Virus record (IMG/VR): IMGVR_UViG_3300024239_000014
Span: 1 to 64,000 of that record
DNA length: 64,000 nucleotides
Reading direction: 5' to 3' (one strand)
In this document: positions 2,799 through 57,317 of the stretch, piece by piece
Layout of the letters: each line of letters begins with the position of its first letter
Position numbering within the stretch: position 1 is the first letter of the stretch
The notes under the pieces: generated by a model
Told to the model about the DNA's origin: nothing
The model's input: only the letters and a program-made list of their open reading frames with translations
Databases searched by the model: none
Translations under genes and position numbers: made by a program

Positions 2799-2809
2799 GG
2801 AATCCTCGT

Positions 2810-3346
2810 TTACGGCTGGGATTGCTCAGCCATCAGGCGGTGCCACTCTTTAATGCGGTAATCACCCTCATCAATCAGAATCAGGTTCATGTCCACTTGC
2901 TTGAGTGTCCACATCCGCCACGATGGTGGTTTCACTGCATCCACAATTGGTTTCATCATGGTATTGTATTCCAATTGGAAAGCCAATTCCGTCTGATGGA
3001 TGAACTCGTCCACCAAGGTTGAGTTGGTGCATTCCGTTCCGTAAATCAGCAGGTACAGACGAAGCCAAAATTTGCGCTGGTAGGCGATATCCGGGATGCC
3101 AGAACGCAGGGCGCGATGATCCGGGCGCTCGCCGTTGTCGATCCACAGCAACATTTCGTTCAGTGCCGTAGCGACGAGCGTCGCAGCCAATGATGTCGCA
3201 TTTCTCCATGGAACTTCTTTCGGCATGTCTGCGCTGCGTTGACTGCGGCAGTACGCGCGGATACAGTGAACCATCGGATATATGTCGATCACTACCGCTG
3301 GCAGTAAATCGACCTTTTCGAGACCATGGTGTTTCGAAGCGGGCAT
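2810..3346 (-). CDS. hypothetical protein, ~178 aa (start MPASK)
   Basis: CAGGAG RBS 10 nt before the ATG at 3346; globular-looking sequence. Confidence 0.65.
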   Translation of the reverse strand: MPASKHHGLEKVDLLPAVVIDIYPMVHCIRAYCRSQRSADMPKEVPWRNATSLAATLVATALNEMLLWIDNGERPDHRALRSGIPDIAYQRKFWLRLYLLIYGTECTNSTLVDEFIHQTELAFQLEYNTMMKPIVDAVKPPSWRMWTLKQVDMNLILIDEGDYRIKEWHRLMAEQSQP

Positions 3347-3665
3347 TGTAGTCAAACTCCTGTTCGATAACGAGTATCGCAGTAAACGGTGAAATGAGAG
3401 CAATGTGGGCTTTGGGAAAACCCACGATGAAATTAAGGTGTTTTGCGTAAGCATCCCACAGACGACGTTCGAGGTCTTGTAGGTCAATACTTGTAGAACG
3501 CATGGGGCTGATGTAACTAACGCGACAATCAACGATCTCAAGGGCATCGACAGCACGCTGAAGCAATTGAAGGATATCACTACCGTTGAAGCGCATTCCG
3601 GGATGGCGTTTAAAAAACGCCAGGAGAGCTTCTTCAAGGTCTACACTAAGGGCAACATGGGTCAT
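2871..3665 (-). CDS. hypothetical protein; first ~110 aa protein-like, the rest overlaps the next gene
   Basis: First ORF after the intergenic region; no stop until 2871. Confidence 0.55.
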   Translation of the reverse strand: MTHVALSVDLEEALLAFFKRHPGMRFNGSDILQLLQRAVDALEIVDCRVSYISPMRSTSIDLQDLERRLWDAYAKHLNFIVGFPKAHIALISPFTAILVIEQEFDYNARFETPWSRKGRFTASGSDRHISDGSLYPRVLPQSTQRRHAERSSMEKCDIIGCDARRYGTERNVAVDRQRRAPGSSRPAFWHPGYRLPAQILASSVPADLRNGMHQLNLGGRVHPSDGIGFPIGIQYHDETNCGCSETTIVADVDTQASGHEPDSD

Positions 3666-3770
3666 AGCTTAAAACCCTTTCTACGATCGATCTAGACCTA
3701 TTGGTGATATATATCCAAAGGTTGTTTGAGATAGTCTCTATAAATAGACCCTGTGTGTAGTTTTTAATAG

Positions 3771-3801
3771 CGGCATAAGGGTAGGGAATGACCCCTACCC
3801 C
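3771..3801 (-). terminator. hairpin+TATGCCG element
   Basis: Minus strand GGGGTAGGGG-tcatt-CCCTACCC-TTATGCCG. Confidence 0.6.
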
Positions 3802-4034
3802 ATGACCGGATTTTCCGTCCGTTGCACTCTGTGTTCCGAGCTCCTTAACGTGCTCATTGGTAACCAGCTGGCGTGGACGCTAAGATCTTTAACGACGGTA
3901 GGGAGTCACCCATCTTTTTTGCCTTTCGGCCCAGTTTGTTATTCGACAGCCACCGAGGTGGGGTAAACCAGCATCAACCAATGCCTATCCGTTTACCTCA
4001 GCTACGCTAATCCGAAGACTGGCTAGCTGTGTGC
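3802..4034 (-). ncRNA. candidate structured non-coding RNA
   Basis: No ORF; several stems with cUUCGg and GAAA tetraloops and G-U pairs on the minus strand; TATG motif at the 5' end and a hairpin terminator at the 3' end. Confidence 0.55.
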
Positions 4035-4122
4035 ATACAATACACGCTAAAATCAAGGGGTTAGAGTTTGTGCTGTACCGCCCTAGGGGTCCAATCATCT
4101 AACGTGTTTCGTATTGGCTTCG

Positions 4123-4359
4123 TCAGTCCAGCGAGAAACCGGTCGGACGATTGAGCACGAACGCATTCCCTGGGGTGTACGTTTTGCGCTCAAAGAAATT
4201 ATGCCACTGGCCGGTACCGACTTTCAGCCATGGATAGGTCGGGGTCGTCGGTAAGCACGCAGTGCACAAGAGGATACCGCCAGGAGGAGCAGACGCAGTG
4301 AGTACCAGCGACAGTGCATCAACGGTACCGCATTTATCACAAACGAACAAGTCGTTCAC
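4123..4359 (-). CDS. small putative zinc-binding protein
   Basis: CDKC...CTAC pair; GGAGGAG RBS upstream of a GTG start. Confidence 0.6.
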   Translation of the reverse strand: MNDLFVCDKCGTVDALSLVLTASAPPGGILLCTACLPTTPTYPWLKVGTGQWHNFFERKTYTPGNAFVLNRPTGFSLD

Positions 4360-4386
4360 TTCGTTCTCCTCCAGGCAGTAAACCGA

Positions 4387-5424
4387 TTACAGGATCAGGC
4401 CGGTCTCGTCAACGACATCACTGCCAGTAACAAACTGGACAGAGTCTTTGCGGGACTTCGCCTTTTCCTCGTAAGCCTTCACGTGACCTTCGATCGTCTT
4501 GGCAATGACGCGCAGTTGATCGATAAAGACCACGTAATGGATCTCGCCGCAGTTTTGCAGCTGGGCTTCTTCAGGGATGTACCCTTCAGCCAGGTATTCC
4601 TGACCGATCTGGATCGGTACCGATTCACGGTCGGTGTACAACGACGCCACGGTAATCGGATGGACGACACCGGCGGCTTTAAACGCCTCGTCGTCTTTAC
4701 CAGCAAAGATTTCCAGCTGTGCCAACTGAGGTTGGGCACGGGACACCAGGTCAAATCGGAGCAGGTTGCGGATGTCTTGGGAATCCATGCCGTCATTGAG
4801 ACCGGAAGCAAGGATTCGCAGGGCGTTAACGGCGCGAACGCATTCAGCATCGATCTCGCTCTTGGGTGCTTCCACCGAATTGTGCGAATACCACATCACC
4901 AGAGGACGGCTGGTGGTTTTGGTAATGCTGTCAAGGCTCTTCAAAGTCTTGAACGTATTGCTGGCAGTGATAGCCGACTCGTGAGAACCAATCACGACGG
5001 CTACGACCGGGACTTCGCGCTTAAGCAGTTCCTGTACGATCAGTGGACCAAAGACCGACCCCGAACCACCCGAGGCCGAAAAGAGGACCACGTTAAAACC
5101 CAGTGCCCCGTGCTCCAGCAACAGGTCACCGATACTCGACGCGATGGGCGACGAGTTCTCACCACGGATCTTGCCGCTACCGTCAACGTCGGGTAGCAGA
5201 AAGACGGGAAGGTTGTCTCCGGCTTGACGGAGATTGGATCTGGAGGTGTCAGCCAGGACGATGTCCGGCGTGGCCAGGCCAGGCTGGTTTTCACCGTAAG
5301 CCAACTTACGGGCCAGGTTAATACCGCAGCCGCCACAACCGTAGATACGAATGCGATTCGGCGCAGTCTTCGCTTCATGGAAAGTCGCGATCTCTTGAGA
5401 CACGGCGACGGGACGTTTTGCCAT
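4387..5424 (-). CDS. phuZ: PhuZ/TubZ phage tubulin
   Basis: IRIYGCGGCGIN nucleotide-binding loop, GSGK, SASGGSGS tubulin/FtsZ signature, acidic C-terminal tail VVDETGLIL. Confidence 0.93.
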   Translation of the reverse strand: MAKRPVAVSQEIATFHEAKTAPNRIRIYGCGGCGINLARKLAYGENQPGLATPDIVLADTSRSNLRQAGDNLPVFLLPDVDGSGKIRGENSSPIASSIGDLLLEHGALGFNVVLFSASGGSGSVFGPLIVQELLKREVPVVAVVIGSHESAITASNTFKTLKSLDSITKTTSRPLVMWYSHNSVEAPKSEIDAECVRAVNALRILASGLNDGMDSQDIRNLLRFDLVSRAQPQLAQLEIFAGKDDEAFKAAGVVHPITVASLYTDRESVPIQIGQEYLAEGYIPEEAQLQNCGEIHYVVFIDQLRVIAKTIEGHVKAYEEKAKSRKDSVQFVTGSDVVDETGLIL

Positions 5425-5435
5425 AGGTATAAGCC

Positions 5436-5735
5436 TCAAATTCGTGGAGCAGTCGGACCTTTGTTCGGGCCGAGTTGATCGAAAGCAGCCATGGTGTTGG
5501 TCTGAATGCGGCGAGCTTCGCGAAGAAGCTCAATCACCCTGTGGTTGTTATCCACCGCAAGTCTCAAAGCGTCTTCAGCGGTCTTTGTCGACAGAGGTGC
5601 TGGTTTGGTGGCGGTCTGGATAGTGGTCAGAAGCATCGCGTTCTTGGCTTCGAGCTCCAGTAACACTTGCTCCAGCAGGTCTTCCAACTTGGCACCGTCA
5701 GGATTGTCACGCGACATCAGGATGGGGTTTTTCAC
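5436..5735 (-). CDS. hypothetical coiled-coil protein, 99 aa
   Basis: Heptad-rich ORF directly upstream of phuZ. Confidence 0.65.
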   Translation of the reverse strand: MKNPILMSRDNPDGAKLEDLLEQVLLELEAKNAMLLTTIQTATKPAPLSTKTAEDALRLAVDNNHRVIELLREARRIQTNTMAAFDQLGPNKGPTAPRI

Positions 5736-6637: not shown

Positions 6638-6646
6638 GTCATAACA

Positions 6647-6678
6647 AGCGAGGGAGGAAACTCCCTCGCTCTATGCCG
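6647..6678 (+). terminator. hairpin+TATGCCG element
   Basis: AGCGAGGGAG-gaaa-CTCCCTCGCT-CTATGCCG. Confidence 0.7.
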
Positions 6679-7351: not shown

Positions 7352-7429
7352 GCAATGTCCCTCGGTGTGTCGCCCCATACGGTATATCCTGCTGTTAAGT
7401 TTAACGTTAGTTGCCTCTTTAGTTTATTA

Positions 7430-7910
7430 CGTACGTACGCACACCCGCGCCCACCGGCGTTAAACAAGCCTTCGTACTACTTACGTAGTACTCAGGTGAT
7501 TATACGGTATTTTCCCTACGGGAAAAATACCGTGTATACACGTGCGTACCCGCACGTATAAATATATATTTAATTAAGAGAATTACGAAATATATAAATA
7601 TATTTCTATAATTTAAACTAAGGAAGTGTGCGCATAGGCGCACACGCTATTATAGTCAGGTACTTGACGTACCTTCCTGGTCGACAGACCACTCACAGTG
7701 TTTTTCACAGGATGCCTAACCTGGTGAAAAACACTATTCGTGTTCGACCTAACTGGGAGAACCTAGCAGGAGTGCTTGTGGTAAACCACGCACTCAAAAC
7801 CGAGTATATTCCTATGGACGGAAAATTCACACCGTAAAAAGTTTTGCACAAACGGGTGTTGCACACAAAGCCCCCCGACCCCCCGCGCTTCGCGGCCGGC
7901 CGGCTGGGTC
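7430..7910. repeat. palindrome-dense intergenic region with AT-rich core
   Basis: At least 9 inverted repeats plus an almost purely A/T stretch at ~7558-7621. Confidence 0.75.
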
Positions 7911-15168: not shown

Positions 15169-15208
15169 GGACATAGAGGGAGGGTCGAAAGACCCTCCCC
15201 TTATGCCG
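15169..15208. terminator. bidirectional hairpin with TATG-containing flanks
   Basis: GGACATA-GAGGGAGGGTC-gaaa-GACCCTCCCC-TTATGCCG between convergent genes. Confidence 0.7.
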
Positions 15209-22758: not shown

Positions 22759-22824
22759 GTGGACCTCTGGTTTACGTTAACTTTTAGGGAATACCGTAAT
22801 AGGCCAAAACATTTTAATGTTTAT

Positions 22825-23188
22825 GACGTGCGGTTGTTCCCGCTGTCGCATGCCTATACGATTTGAGTCTCCATCGGCATCGATGGCGATTTCTCGACTA
22901 TACCCCGATTTTCGTAAGAAGTCGCGGCACTAAAGCCTGGTCGATTAGCTCTACTACGATAGCGCTATCGTGGTAGGTATCCAACGTGCAACGATAGGTG
23001 GTGGCTGAGTAGGCTACTTATAGTTGGTGGTGTAAATCTGTCCTGGGGTAGCAGGGTTGCTTTTCATCACGTTAAACCGTTGAATACAGTCGGCGTAACT
23101 CAGACCTTCTCTGGTAGGTTACCAGACAAAAGACGTCTTTTGTAAACCCTCAGTTGCAGGAATATACCCCCTGCTCAAGGAGTCGTTA
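22825..23188 (+). ncRNA. long structured 5' leader or ncRNA upstream of the tail sheath gene
   Basis: TATG at 22822-22825, then ~360 nt with many stems whose G-U pairs and GNRA loop favour the + strand. Confidence 0.5.
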
Positions 23189-26144: not shown

Positions 26145-26166
26145 TCCGTTAAAGGAGAGGGGTATA

Positions 26167-26198
26167 CGGGAGGACCGAAAGGTCCTCCCGCTATGCCG
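26167..26198 (+). terminator. hairpin+TATGCCG element
   Basis: CGGGAGGACC-gaaa-GGTCCTCCCG-CTATGCCG. Confidence 0.72.
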
Positions 26199-31525: not shown

Positions 31526-31550
31526 TCACCTAGGGAATATAGGTTTGAAA
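31526..31550 (-). promoter_or_regulatory. putative early promoter
   Basis: TTTCAAACCTATATTCCCTAGGTGA, a near copy of 27107-27131. Confidence 0.55.
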
Positions 31551-31568
31551 TGTTTTTAAACTCAATTG

Positions 31569-31602
31569 CGGCATAGAGGGGGGATCTTTCGATCCCCCCT
31601 CT
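31569..31602 (-). terminator. hairpin+TATGCCG element
   Basis: + strand CGGCAT-AGAGGGGGGATC-tttc-GATCCCCCCTCT. Confidence 0.7.
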
Positions 31603-36860: not shown

Positions 36861-37988
36861 TTAACTGTCTTCAAAAAAGAGGGCAGCCCCAACTTTCGAG
36901 CCTTCCAGCATCAGTCGGCTCATGATACCGATCTGATAAGGAGAACCCACGATACGGTTAAAAATCGACATGTGTCCGAACTTGCCGTCCAGCTGCAAAC
37001 CGGACTCGGTTTCCATCACCCCTTCGTACGTTCGACAGGTTACGGATTTCAGCTGGTTACCAAACACCAACTTATCACCGCCGCCGTAGTCTTCTTCGTA
37101 GGTAATGAAATAACGCACCGCCACGGTATCCTGTTCAAGTGGATACCCTTCGATTCGTACCCGGTCCATGACTTCGCCGTCTTCTGCTTCGTCGTTCCGG
37201 AGTTTCCGGACCAATGCAGCGCGTTTACGGTTGTAGGCTTTCACCAACTCCCGCAATGAGTCGGACATGTCTTCGAGGTCCCCTCGATAAAAGACCTCAA
37301 TCTTTTCCACCGTACCCTCGACTTTCGCCTTGGGTGTATGGGATGACAGCATCTTCAAAGTGTCCAACGACATCTCGTCGAAGAGCCCTGAATTGGCCGT
37401 CAGTTGGTCTTCAATCGTACATAGAATTGAGTCAGAGTCAACGATTTCGCCCTCTTTCACAATCCCACGGACCTCTTGGTCGAACTTCAAAATCACTGCT
37501 TTGACTTTCGTGAGTTTGGTCTTAAGCTTCTCGGCAGAACGTGACATCAACGCCGAGGAGTCCTCAAACGTATCTGCGTCATCAAGGATCGCCACGTTAA
37601 ACAGTGCGCCAGATTTCCACAACACCTGTGTCGGGTAGAAGTGGTCTCTGACGAACCAGTGACTATTCCAAGCCAAGACATCGCCCTTAACGAACGATTG
37701 ACCAACCACCACATCTGTTTCTACCTGATGTGGATAGCAACTCCCTTCAGCCCGCCCGAAGCGGCGACCGAGTTCTACCGACGTAACGGTCCCGTCTTTG
37801 TACTCGATCAACAGATGGTTCGGGCTAACCTCTTTCACCATCCCATCAGCCGTCGCAGCAAATGCGTAAAGGTCGCCCACACGCTTAGACAGGACATTTT
37901 CATATCCGGTCACAGTCGGCATGTAGGTATAACCTTCAGCAGCAATACCTGACGATTGTTGGATGCTGGCAAAGAGGGCACGTTTCAT
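36861..37988 (-). CDS. virion RNA polymerase beta-like subunit (gp178-like), exon 2
   Basis: MKRALFASIQ, TFEDS, GDKLVFGNQLK (RpoB GDK motif). Confidence 0.9.
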   Translation of the reverse strand: MKRALFASIQQSSGIAAEGYTYMPTVTGYENVLSKRVGDLYAFAATADGMVKEVSPNHLLIEYKDGTVTSVELGRRFGRAEGSCYPHQVETDVVVGQSFVKGDVLAWNSHWFVRDHFYPTQVLWKSGALFNVAILDDADTFEDSSALMSRSAEKLKTKLTKVKAVILKFDQEVRGIVKEGEIVDSDSILCTIEDQLTANSGLFDEMSLDTLKMLSSHTPKAKVEGTVEKIEVFYRGDLEDMSDSLRELVKAYNRKRAALVRKLRNDEAEDGEVMDRVRIEGYPLEQDTVAVRYFITYEEDYGGGDKLVFGNQLKSVTCRTYEGVMETESGLQLDGKFGHMSIFNRIVGSPYQIGIMSRLMLEGSKVGAALFFEDS

Positions 37989-38330
37989 CTAATGTCTTCA
38001 ATGTGGCCTAACCACACCCGTGCACCGCATGCACTGCTCCAGGTTTTCCCTGGATGTAGAGACTATATCTTCACCCTCGCTGGATTTGCGATAGGGTGCC
38101 TCCCATTTCGGCGGATGCCTACGAGCTCGCGCTCTAGTCGTTGAACGTTCTTCCCAGTAGGAAGCTTCGCTGCGGATTACCCAATCCCAGTCTCTTTTAC
38201 CATACCCAAGTGATTAGCTTGGCCACCTGTACATTACTGTTACAAGCTTGGTGTACTGGGCTTTCAGTGGATTCCCGTCAGTTAGAGAGGATTCGCTACC
38301 GGATTACGCCGGTAGAGGACTATGTAAATA
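37989..38330 (-). mobile_element. group I intron, 342 nt, no internal ORF
   Basis: P (AACUGACGGGAA 38283-38272), Q (AAUCCGCAGC 38178-38169), R (GUUCAACGACUA 38146-38135), S (AAGAUAUAGUC 38071-38061); P1 with U-G wobble at the 5' splice site; terminal G; splicing gives in-frame HDD|MKRAL. Confidence 0.93.
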
Positions 38331-41300
38331 ATCGTCGTGAACGATCGAGGGTGACAGGTTACCAGTAGTACTCAACACCGATGTCAACCCGTCGCCATTC
38401 TTGTCGAACGCTCGTGTGACACCATAAAGGTTGGTGAAGTTCGGATCAGAAGACAGGTAGGTGTTCACCGCCACTTCAGACGAGTCCACCGTTGCTTCAG
38501 AAACCACCCCGAAGTCAGAATCATCGTACGCACGTGTGCTGCGCACCATGGTGCGACTACTGCGACCGCCAGTACCACCAAAGGTCACAGCTTCCTGTTC
38601 TTTCAAGTGGTGAACCGGGTTGATGTCCTGCACCAGTGTGATACTCGGATCGCTCTGAATTGCATTCCATACCGCATTGGGCTTGATGTCAATGCTGGCT
38701 CGACTCGTTACCGGTTTTCCATGGTACTGTTTCAGCGCCATAGCCAATTCACGATACACGGCACCGGCAATACGCTCGTAGCCTTTGAATCGATCTGGAC
38801 GGTGTTCCACTTCATCATTCTGAAGCATTTCCACGGAGCGGAAAAGCAGCCCATCAAAAGTGGTTGGTTCCTGGTAGCTTTCCAGCAACGTCTTCGTGAT
38901 CGGATCTACGAAGTGCAGCATCAGCACATCAAGCTCACGCAGCTGTCTGGCTGTCATCCCAAGCCCATCGAGCAGGTTCAGGTAGACATCCTGCCGGTTG
39001 AACTCCTTCACGGAATAGTGCGACATCTGCCGGTGGAAACGGTTCATGCCAGAAAGCACCAACGCTGCTTTTCGGTCGTGGCGCGACAGAGCCCAGGTTT
39101 CATCCTTAAAGCGCAGTGAATATTCACCATGCTCCAGGGTGGCCTTTTGCCCCTTGGGAATACGGCGAGGTGTTACCCCCAGTCGTCGGCAGAGTTCGTC
39201 CAAACCGAAGTAGTAGCCGAAGACAAACCCGAGCGGGATTTCCTTACCGGCCACTTTTATCTCGATCTGTTCAATCGGCGCTTGGTTGTTATCAAAACCA
39301 ACCAGATCGCCAATATCGCCCACTGGCATTGGTTTACCGTCTTCCGTGGTATAAAGCGCATCGCGATCATCGACGTACAGGAACTTCGAGTTGTCTTCAC
39401 GTCGTCCCATGACCACCAAGCCGTCGATCTCACCTGCCAAGGCATCTGCACCAAAGAAGGCGGCGCGGTTGTCGTAGTCGAAGTTCAACTCCCAGCCATT
39501 TACGGTAAAGCCGATAAAGCGACTGGTCAGGATGGTGTACAGACGAGGAAGGCGCGACCCCTTCTTCCGACCCTGGGTTTTGTACGCCAGCTTGGAAACA
39601 GTGGCGTTATCACCCATTGACATGTAGATGATGCGGTTCTGCAACCACCGACCGTAGTTGTGCACGGCCTTCTCAGAACGTTTCACAAAGAGCTTGCCGT
39701 AGTAGCTGGTCAAAGCCACTTTATCCGGAGCCACCTTGTGGATCGGACAATCACCTCGTTGCTTACGCAGACGGTATTTCACGCCATCGGCCACCCAGCT
39801 ACCGTCTTCAGCCACGACCGGCAGCTCGATCCGCACGGTCGTGGGTTTGCCAGCCACTGGGACCAGTTTAACAGTGATCACGTCGTATTTGTTCAGAGCG
39901 TCTTTGACGCGCTCTACTTCGTACGACGTCACGGCAACACCCGAATGCTGCAGCGACATGATCATCCGCGCTACGTCTCGATGCAGGACGTCTTTGATGT
40001 ACGCCTTGTCGAAATCGAGCAGCGTACTTCTCAGCATGGTCTTGTCAGTGACTGCTTCATGGTCAGTTACAGAGAGTCGTTCGGGCTTCAACGAAACATC
40101 GCTGTCTTTGACATCAATCAAGTCAGCCAATGTCCCTTGACCAAAGGGGTTTTCGATGGACTTGTAACTGTTCGCCAGTTTTTCAAAGCGACGAAATTCG
40201 GCTCCAGAAATCATAGCGTGTTCAAGCAAGCGTTCAGCGCTGTGGATTACACCGAGTTCCGGTTTCGCAGTCAGGTCAATCGCCGCTTTACTTTCATTAC
40301 CCACCTGCCCCAGTTCCACACCAGGGATGTGGAGCTCAAACAGATCGTCATTCCAAATGTCCACAGCACCTTCTGCCAGAGCTTCGAGTTCTTCGCGATA
40401 CTCGTCAGCTTCTTTTTCAGACATTTCAGGAATGGCGGCTTCCTGCTCTTCTGGCATCGGTGTATCTTTCAGACGTTCAGGTACGGTAGCGCCTGGTGCT
40501 TCGCTACCGCTGTCGCTTTCATCGTCAGTGTCGTGGACTGGCGGTAGATCACTGTCTTCTTCGACAGCATCGACCTGTACTGCGGTGAAGACGTTTTCAG
40601 CACGCAGCTTGGCGAGTTGGATAAAGAAGTAGTAGACCTTCCGTTGAAAGGTTTCCATGCTTGCATCGATGACATCACCATCGGTCTTTGCACGCGCTTT
40701 GCGCCACCCATCCAATTGACCGAGGTTGATCACCCCACCCTGACCGTTATCAGTAACCACCAGGTTCACACGAGCCAGAGCCTCGGGCTTGATTTTCGAC
40801 AGCAACGACTCACCGTGCTTCTTACCAGCCCAAGTCCACAGGTCGAGCAGAAACATCGACTCGTACGTCGACAACGATTCCACCACGTTTTTAGACAGGC
40901 TATTTTCACCCATCTTCAACAGCGCTAACCGCGGCAGGTGTTGCGGTAGGTTGATGTGGATGTAATGCTGACGATCGCTCTGGATAGCAATGTCGTTGAT
41001 GGTTTCGATCATCGTGGCAAAAATGTTCTGCCAACGATAATAGTTTGCCATGAAGTTAACGGGGTAGCGGTACAGATGCTGGAGTAACGCGTAGTTGATA
41101 ACCAGGGTAGACCGCAGGTCACGATCCACCATGTCAAACTGCCGCACCCGTCTGAGCAGACGGTTCTTCTTCTCCAGGTCGCGGATTGCAGTACCGGCAT
41201 TGATAGACCCCATGCGAATAGGTCTACCTACTTCACTTTTAAGTTCTGCCACATGCTGACAGTACAGCAACCCGCCCTTGCGCTGAATGAACGGGTCGTT

Positions 41301-41459
41301 GTTATCCAACGACCGTTCTTGTGTGTTCAGTGGCAGATAATGGTACACCGGCCGTAGGGGAAAGGCCAATTCAACCAAGGGCTTAAATGCAAAGCCTGTC
41401 AGTTGTTGCTCTTTCCACACCCCGTTCTTACGGTAGTACTGTGGGTATTTTAAAAACAT
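38331..41459 (-). CDS. virion RNA polymerase beta-like subunit (gp178-like), exon 1
   Basis: GTGGRS.R.M and SEATVDS motifs; ends in HDD; spliced product 1418 aa. Confidence 0.9.
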
Positions 41460-56633: not shown

Positions 56634-56642
56634 AGCCGTTCC

Positions 56643-57317
56643 TTACAAGTTATTATCCAGATGCTGCGCCTTCAGGTACGTCGACAGCACTTCCGATGAC
56701 TTCGCCCGAGAACCGAGCTCCCGCAACTCAGCTACGGTAGCGACACCGCGTTCGTAAATCATCCGGTTTGACGCATCAAAGGCAGTACCGTCCCCACCAC
56801 GTACCTTCAACAATTCAAAGGCCGCACTCTTCAGACCACGCGACTCCAGGATCAGTGCCTGAGGGAAACTGATGCTACTGCCTTTAGAATCACCGGTGGG
56901 TTGTCCGGTCATGGTGTCAATGTGCGAGTTGTCGCTTGCCAGCGACCCTTTCTTTCGCTGGATCTGACTTTGACGACGGGTTGGCAATGTGAGGATCAGT
57001 GCCGGTTTGTTCGTGAAGGTGTCAATCCCTGTTGCTGGGTCGGTGAACTTCACACGTTCCCAGAACTTGATCCCCATGCTTTCACCGATATCCAACAACT
57101 CTTCAACACCCAGATGGGCTTCGCTGTTTGGCAGAGTAATTCGAAGATGATGTTTGCCATTTTGAAAATCGGTCATCAGAGCTTCGAACTGCTGATCGGT
57201 CAGGCGATCGAGCTGAGTTCGCGTTAGAGCTGCGTTGGGGGTATTGGGAGCGCACCTTTCCATCAGGCTGACGAAGTATTGGGTTGCCTTCTCCCGACGT
57301 TCTTTGAGGTTTTTCAT
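56643..57317 (-). CDS. virion RNA polymerase beta C-terminal subunit (gp149-like)
   Basis: RRQSQ..K, TGQPTG.SKG, ELLKVRGGD (RpoB C-terminal motifs). Confidence 0.85.
   Translation of the reverse strand: MKNLKERREKATQYFVSLMERCAPNTPNAALTRTQLDRLTDQQFEALMTDFQNGKHHLRITLPNSEAHLGVEELLDIGESMGIKFWERVKFTDPATGIDTFTNKPALILTLPTRRQSQIQRKKGSLASDNSHIDTMTGQPTGDSKGSSISFPQALILESRGLKSAAFELLKVRGGDGTAFDASNRMIYERGVATVAELRELGSRAKSSEVLSTYLKAQHLDNNL

What the first reader, a model, noticed from the sequence alone, without database searches (positions are those of the whole stretch)
3771..4037. Stand-alone ~265-nt structured RNA gene candidate beside phuZ
Seen on the minus strand, with no ORF: TATG at 4037-4034; stem CAGCUA..cUUCGg..UAGCUG (3999-4029); GGUAAAC/GUUUACC enclosing a G-U-containing hairpin (3962-3997); CCAC-cucg-GUGG (3950-3961); GCC-gaaa-GGC (3921-3930); AAGAU/AUCUU; possible 5' GCAC / 3' GUGC closure (4031-4034 with 3824-3827); then a hairpin+TATGCCG end. 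Known: phiKZ late promoters have a TATG consensus at the start site. Inference: an independently transcribed late multi-branched ncRNA that matches no tRNA, riboswitch or intron core I recognise. Possible roles include a virion assembly/packaging RNA, protein sponge or ribozyme. This is my best candidate for an undescribed element.
Basis: partly seen in the sequence, partly recalled or inferred. Interest (0 to 1): 0.75.

Follow-up and report, generated by a model that had tools for sequence, protein, structure and literature searches.

The report
Conserved structured RNA beside phage phuZ
A roughly 265-290-base non-coding stretch next to the tubulin gene of an uncultivated jumbo phage is a real, conserved, folded RNA element that matches no described RNA family, but its job and its exact 5' end are still unknown.

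Summary
Seven homologous copies were recovered from wastewater and subsurface assemblies. They fall into two types, A and B. Between types the three 5' hairpins are only 52% identical, yet they fold into the same three hairpins. One core helix and the terminal hairpin carry compensatory changes. The core (GNRA hairpin, UUAAAGAUCU linker, CGUCC/GGACG helix) is 70-80% identical, against 66% for phuZ and 59% for the zinc-ribbon gene. Rfam 15, ARAGORN, phage, viral, metagenome and bacterial-genome searches found no relative.

The "hairpin + TATGCCG end" is not specific to this RNA. It is the phage's general phiKZ-type terminator, with about 40 copies genome-wide. Independent "late" transcription from TATG is not shown: one RNA-library contig begins 23 nt upstream of that start. 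RNA-type libraries hold this region preferentially, and one metatranscriptome contig ends right after the terminator.

Best reading: a new, lineage-restricted phage structured ncRNA, probably acting as a protein-binding RNA. Its function is untested.

The parts
4038..4122 (-). Conserved upstream block between the stop of the 78-aa gene and TATG. It contains the locus-specific box ACAAACTCTAAC (4060-4071) and a small CCC-CUA-GGG hairpin. It may be promoter DNA, part of the RNA, or both.
   Evidence: 73% identical to L002 and about 95% to L013. The box occurs only here in the genome. A similar box, ACAATYTGGWTAAG, heads the non-coding cassettes at the same site in L004-L007. The RNA-library contig in X26 begins at about 4057.
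4034..4037 (-). TATG, a candidate phiKZ-type late start signal (start at G4034).
   Evidence: Invariant in all 8 copies. phiKZ late promoters are TATG with +1 at the G (PMC4666361). Function here is not shown.
3999..4029 (-). Hairpin H1: about 13 bp with bulges and a UUCG loop.
   Evidence: Types A and B have different stem sequences but the same length, position and loop. Within type B, one pair runs C-G (L002), U-G (L013), U-A (L085). Two type A variants each carry one mismatch.
3962..3997 (-). Hairpin H2: 7-bp basal stem, conserved internal loop (CG.AUAG), 5-6-bp apical stem.
   Evidence: GGUAAAC/GUUUACC in type A versus GGCGAGU/ACUCGCC in type B. In L011 the apical stem keeps pairing through U-G/U-A/G-C switches, and there is one A-C mismatch in the basal stem.
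3950..3961 (-). Hairpin H3: 4 bp in type A, a 10-11-bp hairpin of 30 nt in type B. A variable arm.
3804..3949 (-). Conserved core, modelled as a four-way junction. Its parts are:
- joining strand UAACAAA;
- long-range helix CUGG (3931-3934) with CCGG (3806-3809);
- GNRA hairpin (3921-3930);
- A-rich linker;
- hairpin P-mid (3894-3914);
- invariant linker UUAAAGAUCU (3883-3892);
- helix CGUCC (3875-3879) with GGACG (3816-3820), closing a variable arm (3824-3872). The arm is 38 nt longer in type A (3829-3866).
   Evidence: Covariance model R1 scores 171-176 bits on type A and 84-88 bits on type B, with no other hit in the genome or in other loci. In P-mid, 3 of 4 pairs change on both sides. CGUCC/GGACG has one U-A to U-G change. 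The other helices are invariant. Cores folded alone give the same architecture in both types.
3771..3801 (-). phiKZ-type terminator: 10-11-bp GC-rich hairpin (3778-3801) followed by UAUGCCG (3771-3777).
   Evidence: Compensatory U-A/C-G and G-C/C-G changes among copies. The same hairpin+YTATGCCGY occurs about 40 times after genes in this genome, including bidirectional pairs. It matches the mapped phiKZ terminator motif ...YTTATKYYGT (PMC10914365). A metatranscriptome contig ends at 3770.
3666..3770 (-). Conserved spacer downstream of the terminator, with a promoter-like CACCAATAGGTCT (ATAGGT at 3696-3701) and the ribosome-binding site of the 264-aa gene (2871-3665).
   Evidence: 74.5% identical between types. 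ATATAG/ATAGGT motifs are enriched upstream of genes in this genome.
4123..4359 (-). Neighbouring 78-aa gene: a four-cysteine zinc-ribbon protein (CxxC...CxxC). It lies directly upstream of the non-coding site in all related clades.
   Evidence: C7, C10, C32, C35 invariant; synteny.
4387..5424 (-). phuZ (tubulin PhuZ), which anchors the synteny.
   Evidence: phrog_4733, E = 6.6e-80; homologues.

Best explanation
The gap encodes a conserved, folded non-coding RNA of about 265 nt (if it starts at G4034) to about 290 nt (if it starts near 4057-4061). It is read on the minus strand and ends at a phiKZ-type terminator (3771-3801).

Shown:
- It is non-coding and conserved.
- The helices are maintained through sequence turnover.
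- Its 3' signal is the phage's own terminator.
- It has no relative in any library searched.

Inferred: the RNA accumulates as a discrete stable molecule, from a promoter inside 4034-4071 and/or by processing of read-through phuZ-operon transcripts. I infer it works in trans as a protein-binding RNA (scaffold or decoy). In that picture the invariant, largely unpaired four-way-junction core (GNRA hairpin, A-rich linker, UUAAAGAUCU, CGUCC/GGACG) is the recognition surface. The fast-evolving hairpins H1-H3 and the variable arm give stability and bulk. The partner is unknown.
For: - No conserved ORF.
- Non-coding blocks are 70-82% identical between types A and B, against 66.5% for phuZ, 58.6% for the zinc-ribbon gene and about 40% for the downstream gene.
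- H1-H3 are 52% identical, yet independent MFE folds give the same three hairpins (z = -2.2 and -3.1).
- Compensatory changes occur in P-mid (3 of 4 pairs), in the terminator hairpin and in H1 of type B, via a U-G intermediate that fits only this strand.
- The conserved core has weak folding energy (z = -0.9 and -1.3) but the highest sequence conservation. That is the pattern expected of a binding or tertiary core rather than of simple hairpins.
- The terminator motif is generic and oriented for the minus strand (PMC10914365).
- RNA-type libraries: X26 (13.4 Mb) holds a single contig, 3810-4057, and nothing else of 2800-5500. X21 shows 2.6-6 times the flank depth over 3801-3982, while the DNA library X5 of the same study is flat. 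The X20 metatranscriptome contig 3770-3947 ends just after TATGCCG.
- L084 combines a type B upstream gene with a type A RNA, so the RNA behaves as a separate module.
Against: - Only two sequence types from one narrow lineage, so statistical power for covariation is low. Five of eight core helices never vary.
- Within type A, three single changes break pairs.
- MFE z of the window copy is only -1.6 to -2.1, and its antisense strand folds about as well.
- The runs laid were chosen because they hold this region, so depth comparisons are biased. Logan contigs are not reads, and X21 is flagged 'probably DNA'.
- The 5' end is not mapped, and the X26 contig starts upstream of TATG.
- No partner protein or target is identified. 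No extended complementarity to the phage genome was found. The complex prediction was not run.
Confidence: 0.4

Rival explanations
1. The element is the structured 3' untranslated region of the phuZ/zinc-ribbon operon, possibly trimmed into a 3'-UTR-derived RNA. It would act in cis to stabilise the mRNA and insulate it from the next transcription unit. It would not be an independent gene.
For: - No terminator-like hairpin lies between the stop at 4123 and the RNA. The first phiKZ-type terminator after phuZ is at 3771-3801, so operon transcripts must run through it.
- The X26 contig extends 23 nt upstream of the TATG start.
- TATG is not enriched in upstream regions.
- The X20 metatranscriptome also holds phuZ 5' contigs.
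Against: - The X26 contig stops at about 4057 instead of running into the 78-aa ORF, and no ORF sequence is present in that run.
- The invariant unpaired core is more conserved than the ORFs it would serve.
- The recombinant L084 swaps the RNA independently of the gene.
- TATG and the upstream box are invariant.
Confidence: 0.25
2. The element is a leader or attenuator (riboswitch-like) that controls read-through of the terminator into the downstream 264-aa gene and the genes leading to the DNA polymerase.
For: The layout is a structured conserved domain followed by a terminator and then genes on the same strand. In the window copy, CCCUACC in P-mid duplicates the terminator's 3' arm and could form an antiterminator (repeat D1).
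Against: - That alternative pairing does not co-vary. L008, L011 and L012 have CCCUAAC against GGGGCAGGGG, and type B lacks it.
- The terminator is the generic genome-wide one.
- A conserved 105-nt spacer with a promoter-like ATAGGT motif lies between the terminator and the gene.
- No Rfam riboswitch matched.
Confidence: 0.12
3. The element works at the DNA level, as a replication origin, a centromere-like site for the tubulin system, or a protein-binding site. The hairpins would be incidental or cruciform.
For: - The locus sits beside a TubZ-family tubulin and a small zinc-ribbon protein.
- The locus-specific box ACAAACTCTAAC recurs in form at the same site in distant relatives.
- The palindrome AGATCT is invariant.
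- The antisense strand folds about as well in type A.
Against: - No iterons or direct-repeat arrays.
- Stem sequences are replaced wholesale while complementarity is kept, and G-U intermediates fit one strand only. That is RNA-type selection rather than sequence-specific DNA binding.
- GC skew is uninformative.
- The region is recovered preferentially in RNA-type libraries.
Confidence: 0.08
4. The element is an accessory counter-defence RNA (decoy or sponge for a host immune or RNA-handling protein), carried in a hot spot where related phages hold different non-coding cassettes.
For: - The same site after the zinc-ribbon gene holds unrelated non-coding cassettes in L004-L007.
- L005 and L006, with identical PhuZ, differ by a 442-nt non-coding indel.
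- L084 is a recombinant.
- The 5' domain turns over fast while the core is fixed.
Against: - No similarity to CRISPR repeats, tRNAs, toxin-antitoxin RNAs or any host RNA.
- The host is unknown.
- Hot-spot behaviour is also expected of neutral spacer DNA.
Confidence: 0.12

Closest known systems
sRNAs mapped in phiKZ and 201phi2-1 by ONT-cappable-seq (e.g. sRNA005 / sRNAgp182; PMC11512511, PMC10914365)
   Same: Non-coding RNAs encoded by nucleus-forming jumbo phages, conserved among relatives, bounded by phage promoters and phiKZ-type terminators, function unknown.
   Different: Those are under 250 nt, mostly 5'-UTR-derived by premature termination, and sit upstream of a tail gene. This one lies after the phuZ operon, is larger and multi-branched, and shares no sequence with phiKZ-like isolates. 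phiKZ has no equivalent gap after phuZ.
phi29 prohead (packaging) RNA
   Same: A phage-encoded, multi-helix, protein-binding structural RNA of similar size class (from established knowledge).
   Different: No sequence or Rfam match. pRNA belongs to small podoviruses with protein-primed genomes. Nothing links this RNA to the portal or terminase.
Bacterial 3'-UTR-derived small RNAs
   Same: They share the terminator of the upstream operon and may arise both by processing and from an internal promoter. That fits the absence of a terminator between the 78-aa gene and the RNA.
   Different: Those act by short seed pairing with Hfq or ProQ. Here no target complementarity was found, and the conserved part is a junction core rather than a linear seed.
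Orphan large structured ncRNA classes found by comparative genomics, some phage-borne (GOLLD, ROOL, HEARO, raiA in Rfam)
   Same: Discovered as long conserved ORF-free gaps with covarying helices and invariant junctions. Function initially unknown.
   Different: None of these models matches, even at E <= 10. This family is much smaller (7-8 sequences, one lineage).

Membership tests
Any Rfam 15 family (4227 models) | Score at or above the family's gathering threshold | tested here: not met
   Gathering scan of the window: only the group I intron at 38037-38340. Permissive scans (E <= 10) of 3500-4400 and of L002 6250-6800 gave only noise outside the core.
tRNA / tmRNA | Cloverleaf or tmRNA fold detected by ARAGORN | tested here: not met
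   0 genes in the window.
Group I intron | P3-P8 catalytic core matching RF00028, with flanking exons | tested here: not met
   RF00028 finds the true intron at 38037-38340 but nothing here, even at E <= 10. The flanks are separate genes.
Hammerhead ribozyme | CUGANGA box, stem II, GAAA | tested here: not met
   Type B reads CUGAUG-CGUCC...GGACG-GAAA but lacks A9. Type A has CUUAG in place of CUGAUG. No Rfam hit.
phiKZ-type intrinsic terminator | GC-rich hairpin directly followed by YTTATKYYGT-like tail (PMC10914365) | tested here: met
   GGGGUAGGGG-UCAU-UCCCUACCCU + UAUGCCGC at 3770-3801. About 40 like sites after genes in this genome. A metatranscriptome contig ends at 3770.
phiKZ late (nvRNAP) promoter | TATG with transcription starting at the G, and activity with the non-virion RNA polymerase (PMC4666361) | tested here: inconclusive
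   The TATG motif is present and invariant. It is not enriched upstream of genes. An RNA-library contig starts 23 nt upstream of it. Activity cannot be tested with these tools.
Riboswitch / transcription attenuator | Conserved aptamer whose 3' strand competes with a terminator (conserved alternative pairing), directly upstream of the regulated gene | tested here: not met
   The candidate antiterminator (CCCUACC) does not co-vary with the terminator and is absent in type B. A promoter-like spacer separates the terminator from the gene.
Structured ncRNA (generic criterion) | Helices supported by compensatory substitutions across homologues | tested here: met
   P-mid has 3 of 4 pairs changed on both sides. 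98.8% of cells are paired, against 93.3% in shuffles and 24-38% when the 3' partners are slid. H1, H2 and the terminator are kept with different sequences. Caveats: two clades only, and the alignment was fitted to the model.
Independent RNA gene | Own mapped 5' start and 3' end, discrete transcript | not testable with these tools
   Only assembled contigs from public runs were available. They suggest a 3' end at about 3770 and a 5' end at or upstream of 4057.

The most novel reading that the evidence does not exclude
The RNA is the first example of a jumbo-phage ribonucleoprotein or decoy RNA carried in a swappable 'non-coding cassette' site beside phuZ. In this reading, different nucleus-forming phages plug different structured RNAs behind a locus-specific box (ACAA..T..TAA) to counter host defences or to control phage-nucleus functions. 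Alternatively, its invariant four-way-junction core is a new catalytic or ligand-binding fold.
Probability: 0.12. Interest if true: 0.8.

Novelty: new member of a known kind. Interest (0 to 1): 0.45.

Why it matters
Very few non-coding RNAs are known in nucleus-forming jumbo phages, and none has a function. This element is long, multi-branched and better conserved than its neighbouring genes, so it is a concrete target for Northern, RACE and deletion work once a host or a cultured relative is found. The site it occupies looks like a hot spot where related phages carry different non-coding cassettes. That would be a new kind of accessory locus if confirmed. The work also shows that the phiKZ terminator signal (hairpin + TATGCCG) holds in a distant uncultivated lineage, which helps annotate such genomes.

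Tried and rejected
Homologue and family searches that found nothing:
- blastn of the gap against INPHARED phages: no match.
- tblastn of the 264-aa neighbour: no match.
- PhuZ and 264-aa protein scans of IMG/VR: none.
- Two core patterns in IMG/VR: none.
- Core pattern in JGI metagenomes: 64 stretches, all chance except the window's own record.
- The same pattern in 185,579 species genomes: 62 stretches, none matching model R1.
- R1 against the whole phage genome, L004-L007 and the Xanthomonas phages RTH11 and LucasX: no second copy or distant homologue.
- The zinc-ribbon protein search gave only one cluster.

Analyses that were uninformative:
- The 5'-domain model R2 found type B only with filters off, at noise-level scores (16, 13.3 and 9.8 bits; similar scores elsewhere). 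The resulting alignment A7 was therefore not used for pair counts.
- Antisense-target search in the phage genome: chance-level hits only.
- Origin hypothesis: GC skew uninformative.
- Sigma-70 and U-tract terminator scan: nothing above shuffles.
- Complex prediction of the zinc-ribbon protein with the RNA was not folded by the tool. It is not evidence either way.

Ideas rejected or left as leads:
- Hammerhead, CRISPR-repeat mimic and 11-nt tetraloop-receptor ideas were rejected on reading the alignment.
- An AR9-like AACA(N6)T(A/G) promoter reading of the upstream box fits poorly (PMC5449584) and is kept only as a lead.

Full report
**Setting.** The window is the first 64 kb of a 249,640-bp IMG/VR virus record. 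The record is a nucleus-forming jumbo phage of the phiKZ kind. It encodes tubulin PhuZ at 4387-5424 on the minus strand (phrog_4733, E = 6.6e-80) and split multisubunit RNA polymerase genes. Its PhuZ is at most 43% identical to that of any isolated phage; the best match is Xanthomonas phage RTH11. The finding lies in a 457-nt gap (3666-4122) between two minus-strand genes: a 78-aa gene (4123-4359) and a 264-aa gene (2871-3665).

**Observation.** The gap holds only 30-54-aa ORFs. The longest on the RNA strand loses its start codon in the relative L002.

| Sequence folded | MFE (kcal/mol) | z against dinucleotide shuffles |
|---|---|---|
| Window 3771-4037, RNA strand | -90.7 | -2.07 and -1.6 (two runs) |
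| Type B homologue (L002) | -91.3 | -4.4 to -4.8 |

Folding energy alone is therefore marginal for the window copy. Rfam 15 finds nothing here at gathering or permissive thresholds, and ARAGORN finds no tRNA or tmRNA.

**Homologues.** Nucleotide and protein scans of the phage, IMG/VR and JGI collections gave nothing.
- Exact-protein look-ups of PhuZ and of the 78-aa protein clusters recovered contigs from wastewater and other assemblies.
- They yield seven full copies and one partial copy of the element.
- Type A comprises the window, L008, L011, L012 and L084.
- Type B comprises L002, L013 and the partial L085. The PhuZ of type B phages is 60% identical to the window's.
- L084 joins a type B zinc-ribbon gene to a type A RNA, so it is a recombinant.

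**Conservation between types A and B**.

| Segment | Identity |
|---|---|
| Upstream block 4038-4122 | 73% (82% over 4021-4080) |
| Hairpins H1-H3 | 52% |
| Core, 5' part | 71% |
| CGUCC...CCGGUC part | 80% |
| Terminator | 82% |
| Downstream spacer | 74.5% |
| phuZ | 66.5% |
| 78-aa gene | 58.6% |
| Downstream gene | about 40% |

The non-coding blocks are thus under at least as much constraint as the best-conserved gene nearby.

**Structure, 5' domain.**
- Independent MFE folds of the type A and type B 5' domains give the same three hairpins at the same positions, with z = -2.2 and -3.1.
- H1 carries a UUCG loop at the same place in both types.
- H2 has a 7-bp basal stem (GGUAAAC/GUUUACC versus GGCGAGU/ACUCGCC) and a shared internal-loop sequence.
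- H3 varies in size.
- Within type B, one H1 pair runs C-G (L002), U-G (L013), U-A (L085). The U-G intermediate fits only the minus-strand RNA.

**Structure, core.**
- A covariance model of the core (R1, 138 positions) scores 171-176 bits on type A and 84-88 bits on type B.
- On its alignment 98.8% of pair cells are standard pairs. Column shuffles give 93.3%, and sliding the 3' partners gives 24-38%.
- The P-mid helix has 3 of 4 pairs changed on both sides, and CGUCC/GGACG has one U-A to U-G change.
- The other five helices never vary, so they are neither supported nor contradicted.
- The variable arm is 38 nt longer in type A.
- The terminal hairpin shows U-A/C-G and G-C/C-G swaps.

**Points against the structure.**
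- Three single changes within type A break pairs.
- The antisense strand of type A folds about as well as the sense strand.
- The core alone has weak z-scores of -0.9 and -1.3.

**The ends.**
- The 'hairpin + TATGCCG' is not peculiar to this RNA. A GC-rich hairpin followed by YTATGCCGY occurs about 40 times after genes across the genome, including palindromic bidirectional pairs.
- That signal matches the experimentally mapped phiKZ terminator motif BCCYCCCCHWWDGGGRRGGBYTTATKYYGT (PMC10914365).
- TATG is the phiKZ late-promoter consensus with +1 at the G (PMC4666361), and it is invariant here. In this genome, however, TATG is not enriched upstream of genes (69 found, 73 expected).
- No terminator separates the RNA from the phuZ operon, so operon transcripts must read through it.
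- The box ACAAACTCTAAC (4060-4071) is unique to this locus in the genome. A box of similar form (ACAATYTGGWTAAG) heads each non-coding cassette at the same site in the more distant relatives L004-L007.
- The 264-aa gene has its own promoter-like ATAGGT motif. It belongs to the class ATATAG(G/T), which is enriched upstream of genes.

**RNA evidence.** Only Logan contigs were available, and the runs were chosen because they hold the region, so these results are only suggestive.
- A 13.4-Mb wastewater RNA-Seq run (X26) holds a single contig covering about 3810-4057 and nothing else of 2800-5500.
- An RNA-Seq library (X21, flagged probably DNA-containing) shows 26-60x depth over 3801-3982 against about 10x on the flanks. 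The DNA library of the same study (X5) is flat.
- A metatranscriptome (X20) has a contig covering 3770-3947, which ends one base after TATGCCG. It also has phuZ 5' contigs.
- Together these suggest a 3' end at the terminator and a 5' end at or upstream of 4057, not at G4034.

**Context.**
- The 78-aa neighbour is a four-cysteine zinc ribbon, conserved at 39-54% identity across all clades.
- In the clade with about 50% PhuZ identity (L004-L007), the same site holds unrelated non-coding cassettes ended by the same kind of terminator.
- L005 and L006/L007 encode identical PhuZ but differ by a 442-nt non-coding indel.
- phiKZ, RTH11 and LucasX have no such gap after phuZ.
- No second copy exists in the genome, and no relative was found in 185,579 bacterial and archaeal species genomes.
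- No extended complementarity to the phage genome was found.

**Interpretation.**
- What is shown: a conserved, ORF-free, minus-strand element whose helices are maintained by compensatory change, ended by the phage's own terminator, with no known family.
- The most likely reading (0.4) is a discrete stable structured RNA that acts through its invariant junction core as a protein-binding scaffold or decoy.
- Rivals are a cis-acting 3' UTR of the phuZ operon (0.25), an attenuator for the downstream genes (0.12), an accessory counter-defence RNA in a cassette hot spot (0.12) and a DNA-level site (0.08).
- The element is best filed as a new, lineage-restricted member of the known kind 'phage-encoded structured ncRNA of unknown function'.

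Noticed in passing
window 38037-38340 (-): A group I intron (RF00028, 78.5 bits) splits an RNA polymerase beta-subunit gene. ORFs 38304-41459 and 36861-37988 match phrog_3148 positions 2-1050 and 1051-1414.
   Followed up: partly
whole genome G000, e.g. window 6645-6678 (+), 15175-15208 (+), 26165-26198 (+), 31550-31581 (-): About 40 copies of a GC-rich hairpin directly followed by YTATGCCGY after genes. Bidirectional palindromic pairs lie at genome 194106/194135 and 247338/247371. This is the same signal as the mapped phiKZ terminator motif, here in a phage whose PhuZ is at most 43% identical to that of any isolate (PMC10914365).
   Followed up: partly
L004 6661-7024; L005 6693-6943; L006 and L007 6693-7385: In the clade with about 50% PhuZ identity, the same site after the zinc-ribbon gene holds unrelated non-coding cassettes. 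Each is headed by ACAATYTGGWTAAG and ended by a hairpin+TATGCC terminator. L005 and L006/L007 have identical PhuZ but differ by a 442-nt indel.
   Followed up: partly
L084 143-733: A recombinant: the zinc-ribbon gene and the first ~20 nt after it are type B, while the RNA is type A.
   Followed up: no
genome G000 upstream regions, e.g. window 27118, 41516, 58537: ATATAG(G/T) is enriched upstream of genes (9 found, 0.9 expected), as is the palindrome TTACGTAA (6 found, 0.4 expected). These are likely promoter or operator classes of this phage.
   Followed up: no
window 7379-7762, 22759-23188, 56634-57102; genome 97780-98633, 163424-164169, 191629-192334: A crude gene call leaves 24 gaps of 200 nt or more. 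Some may hold further non-coding RNAs. The stretch at about 7496-7586 (+) gave a weak hairpin-rich hit to model R2 in three relatives.
   Followed up: no
window 3877-3887 and 4044-4054; 3780-3794 and 3897-3911: There are two short direct repeats inside the element. GAUCUUAGCGU in the core resembles GAUUUUAGCGU in the upstream block. The P-mid hairpin (GGGUGACUCCCUACC) resembles the terminator top (GGGUCAUUCCCUACC). Neither co-varies in relatives.
   Followed up: partly
window 4123-4359 (-): The 78-aa neighbour is a four-cysteine zinc-ribbon protein with invariant W52-H53 and N70-R71. It is conserved next to the non-coding site in all clades, and its function is unknown.
   Followed up: partly
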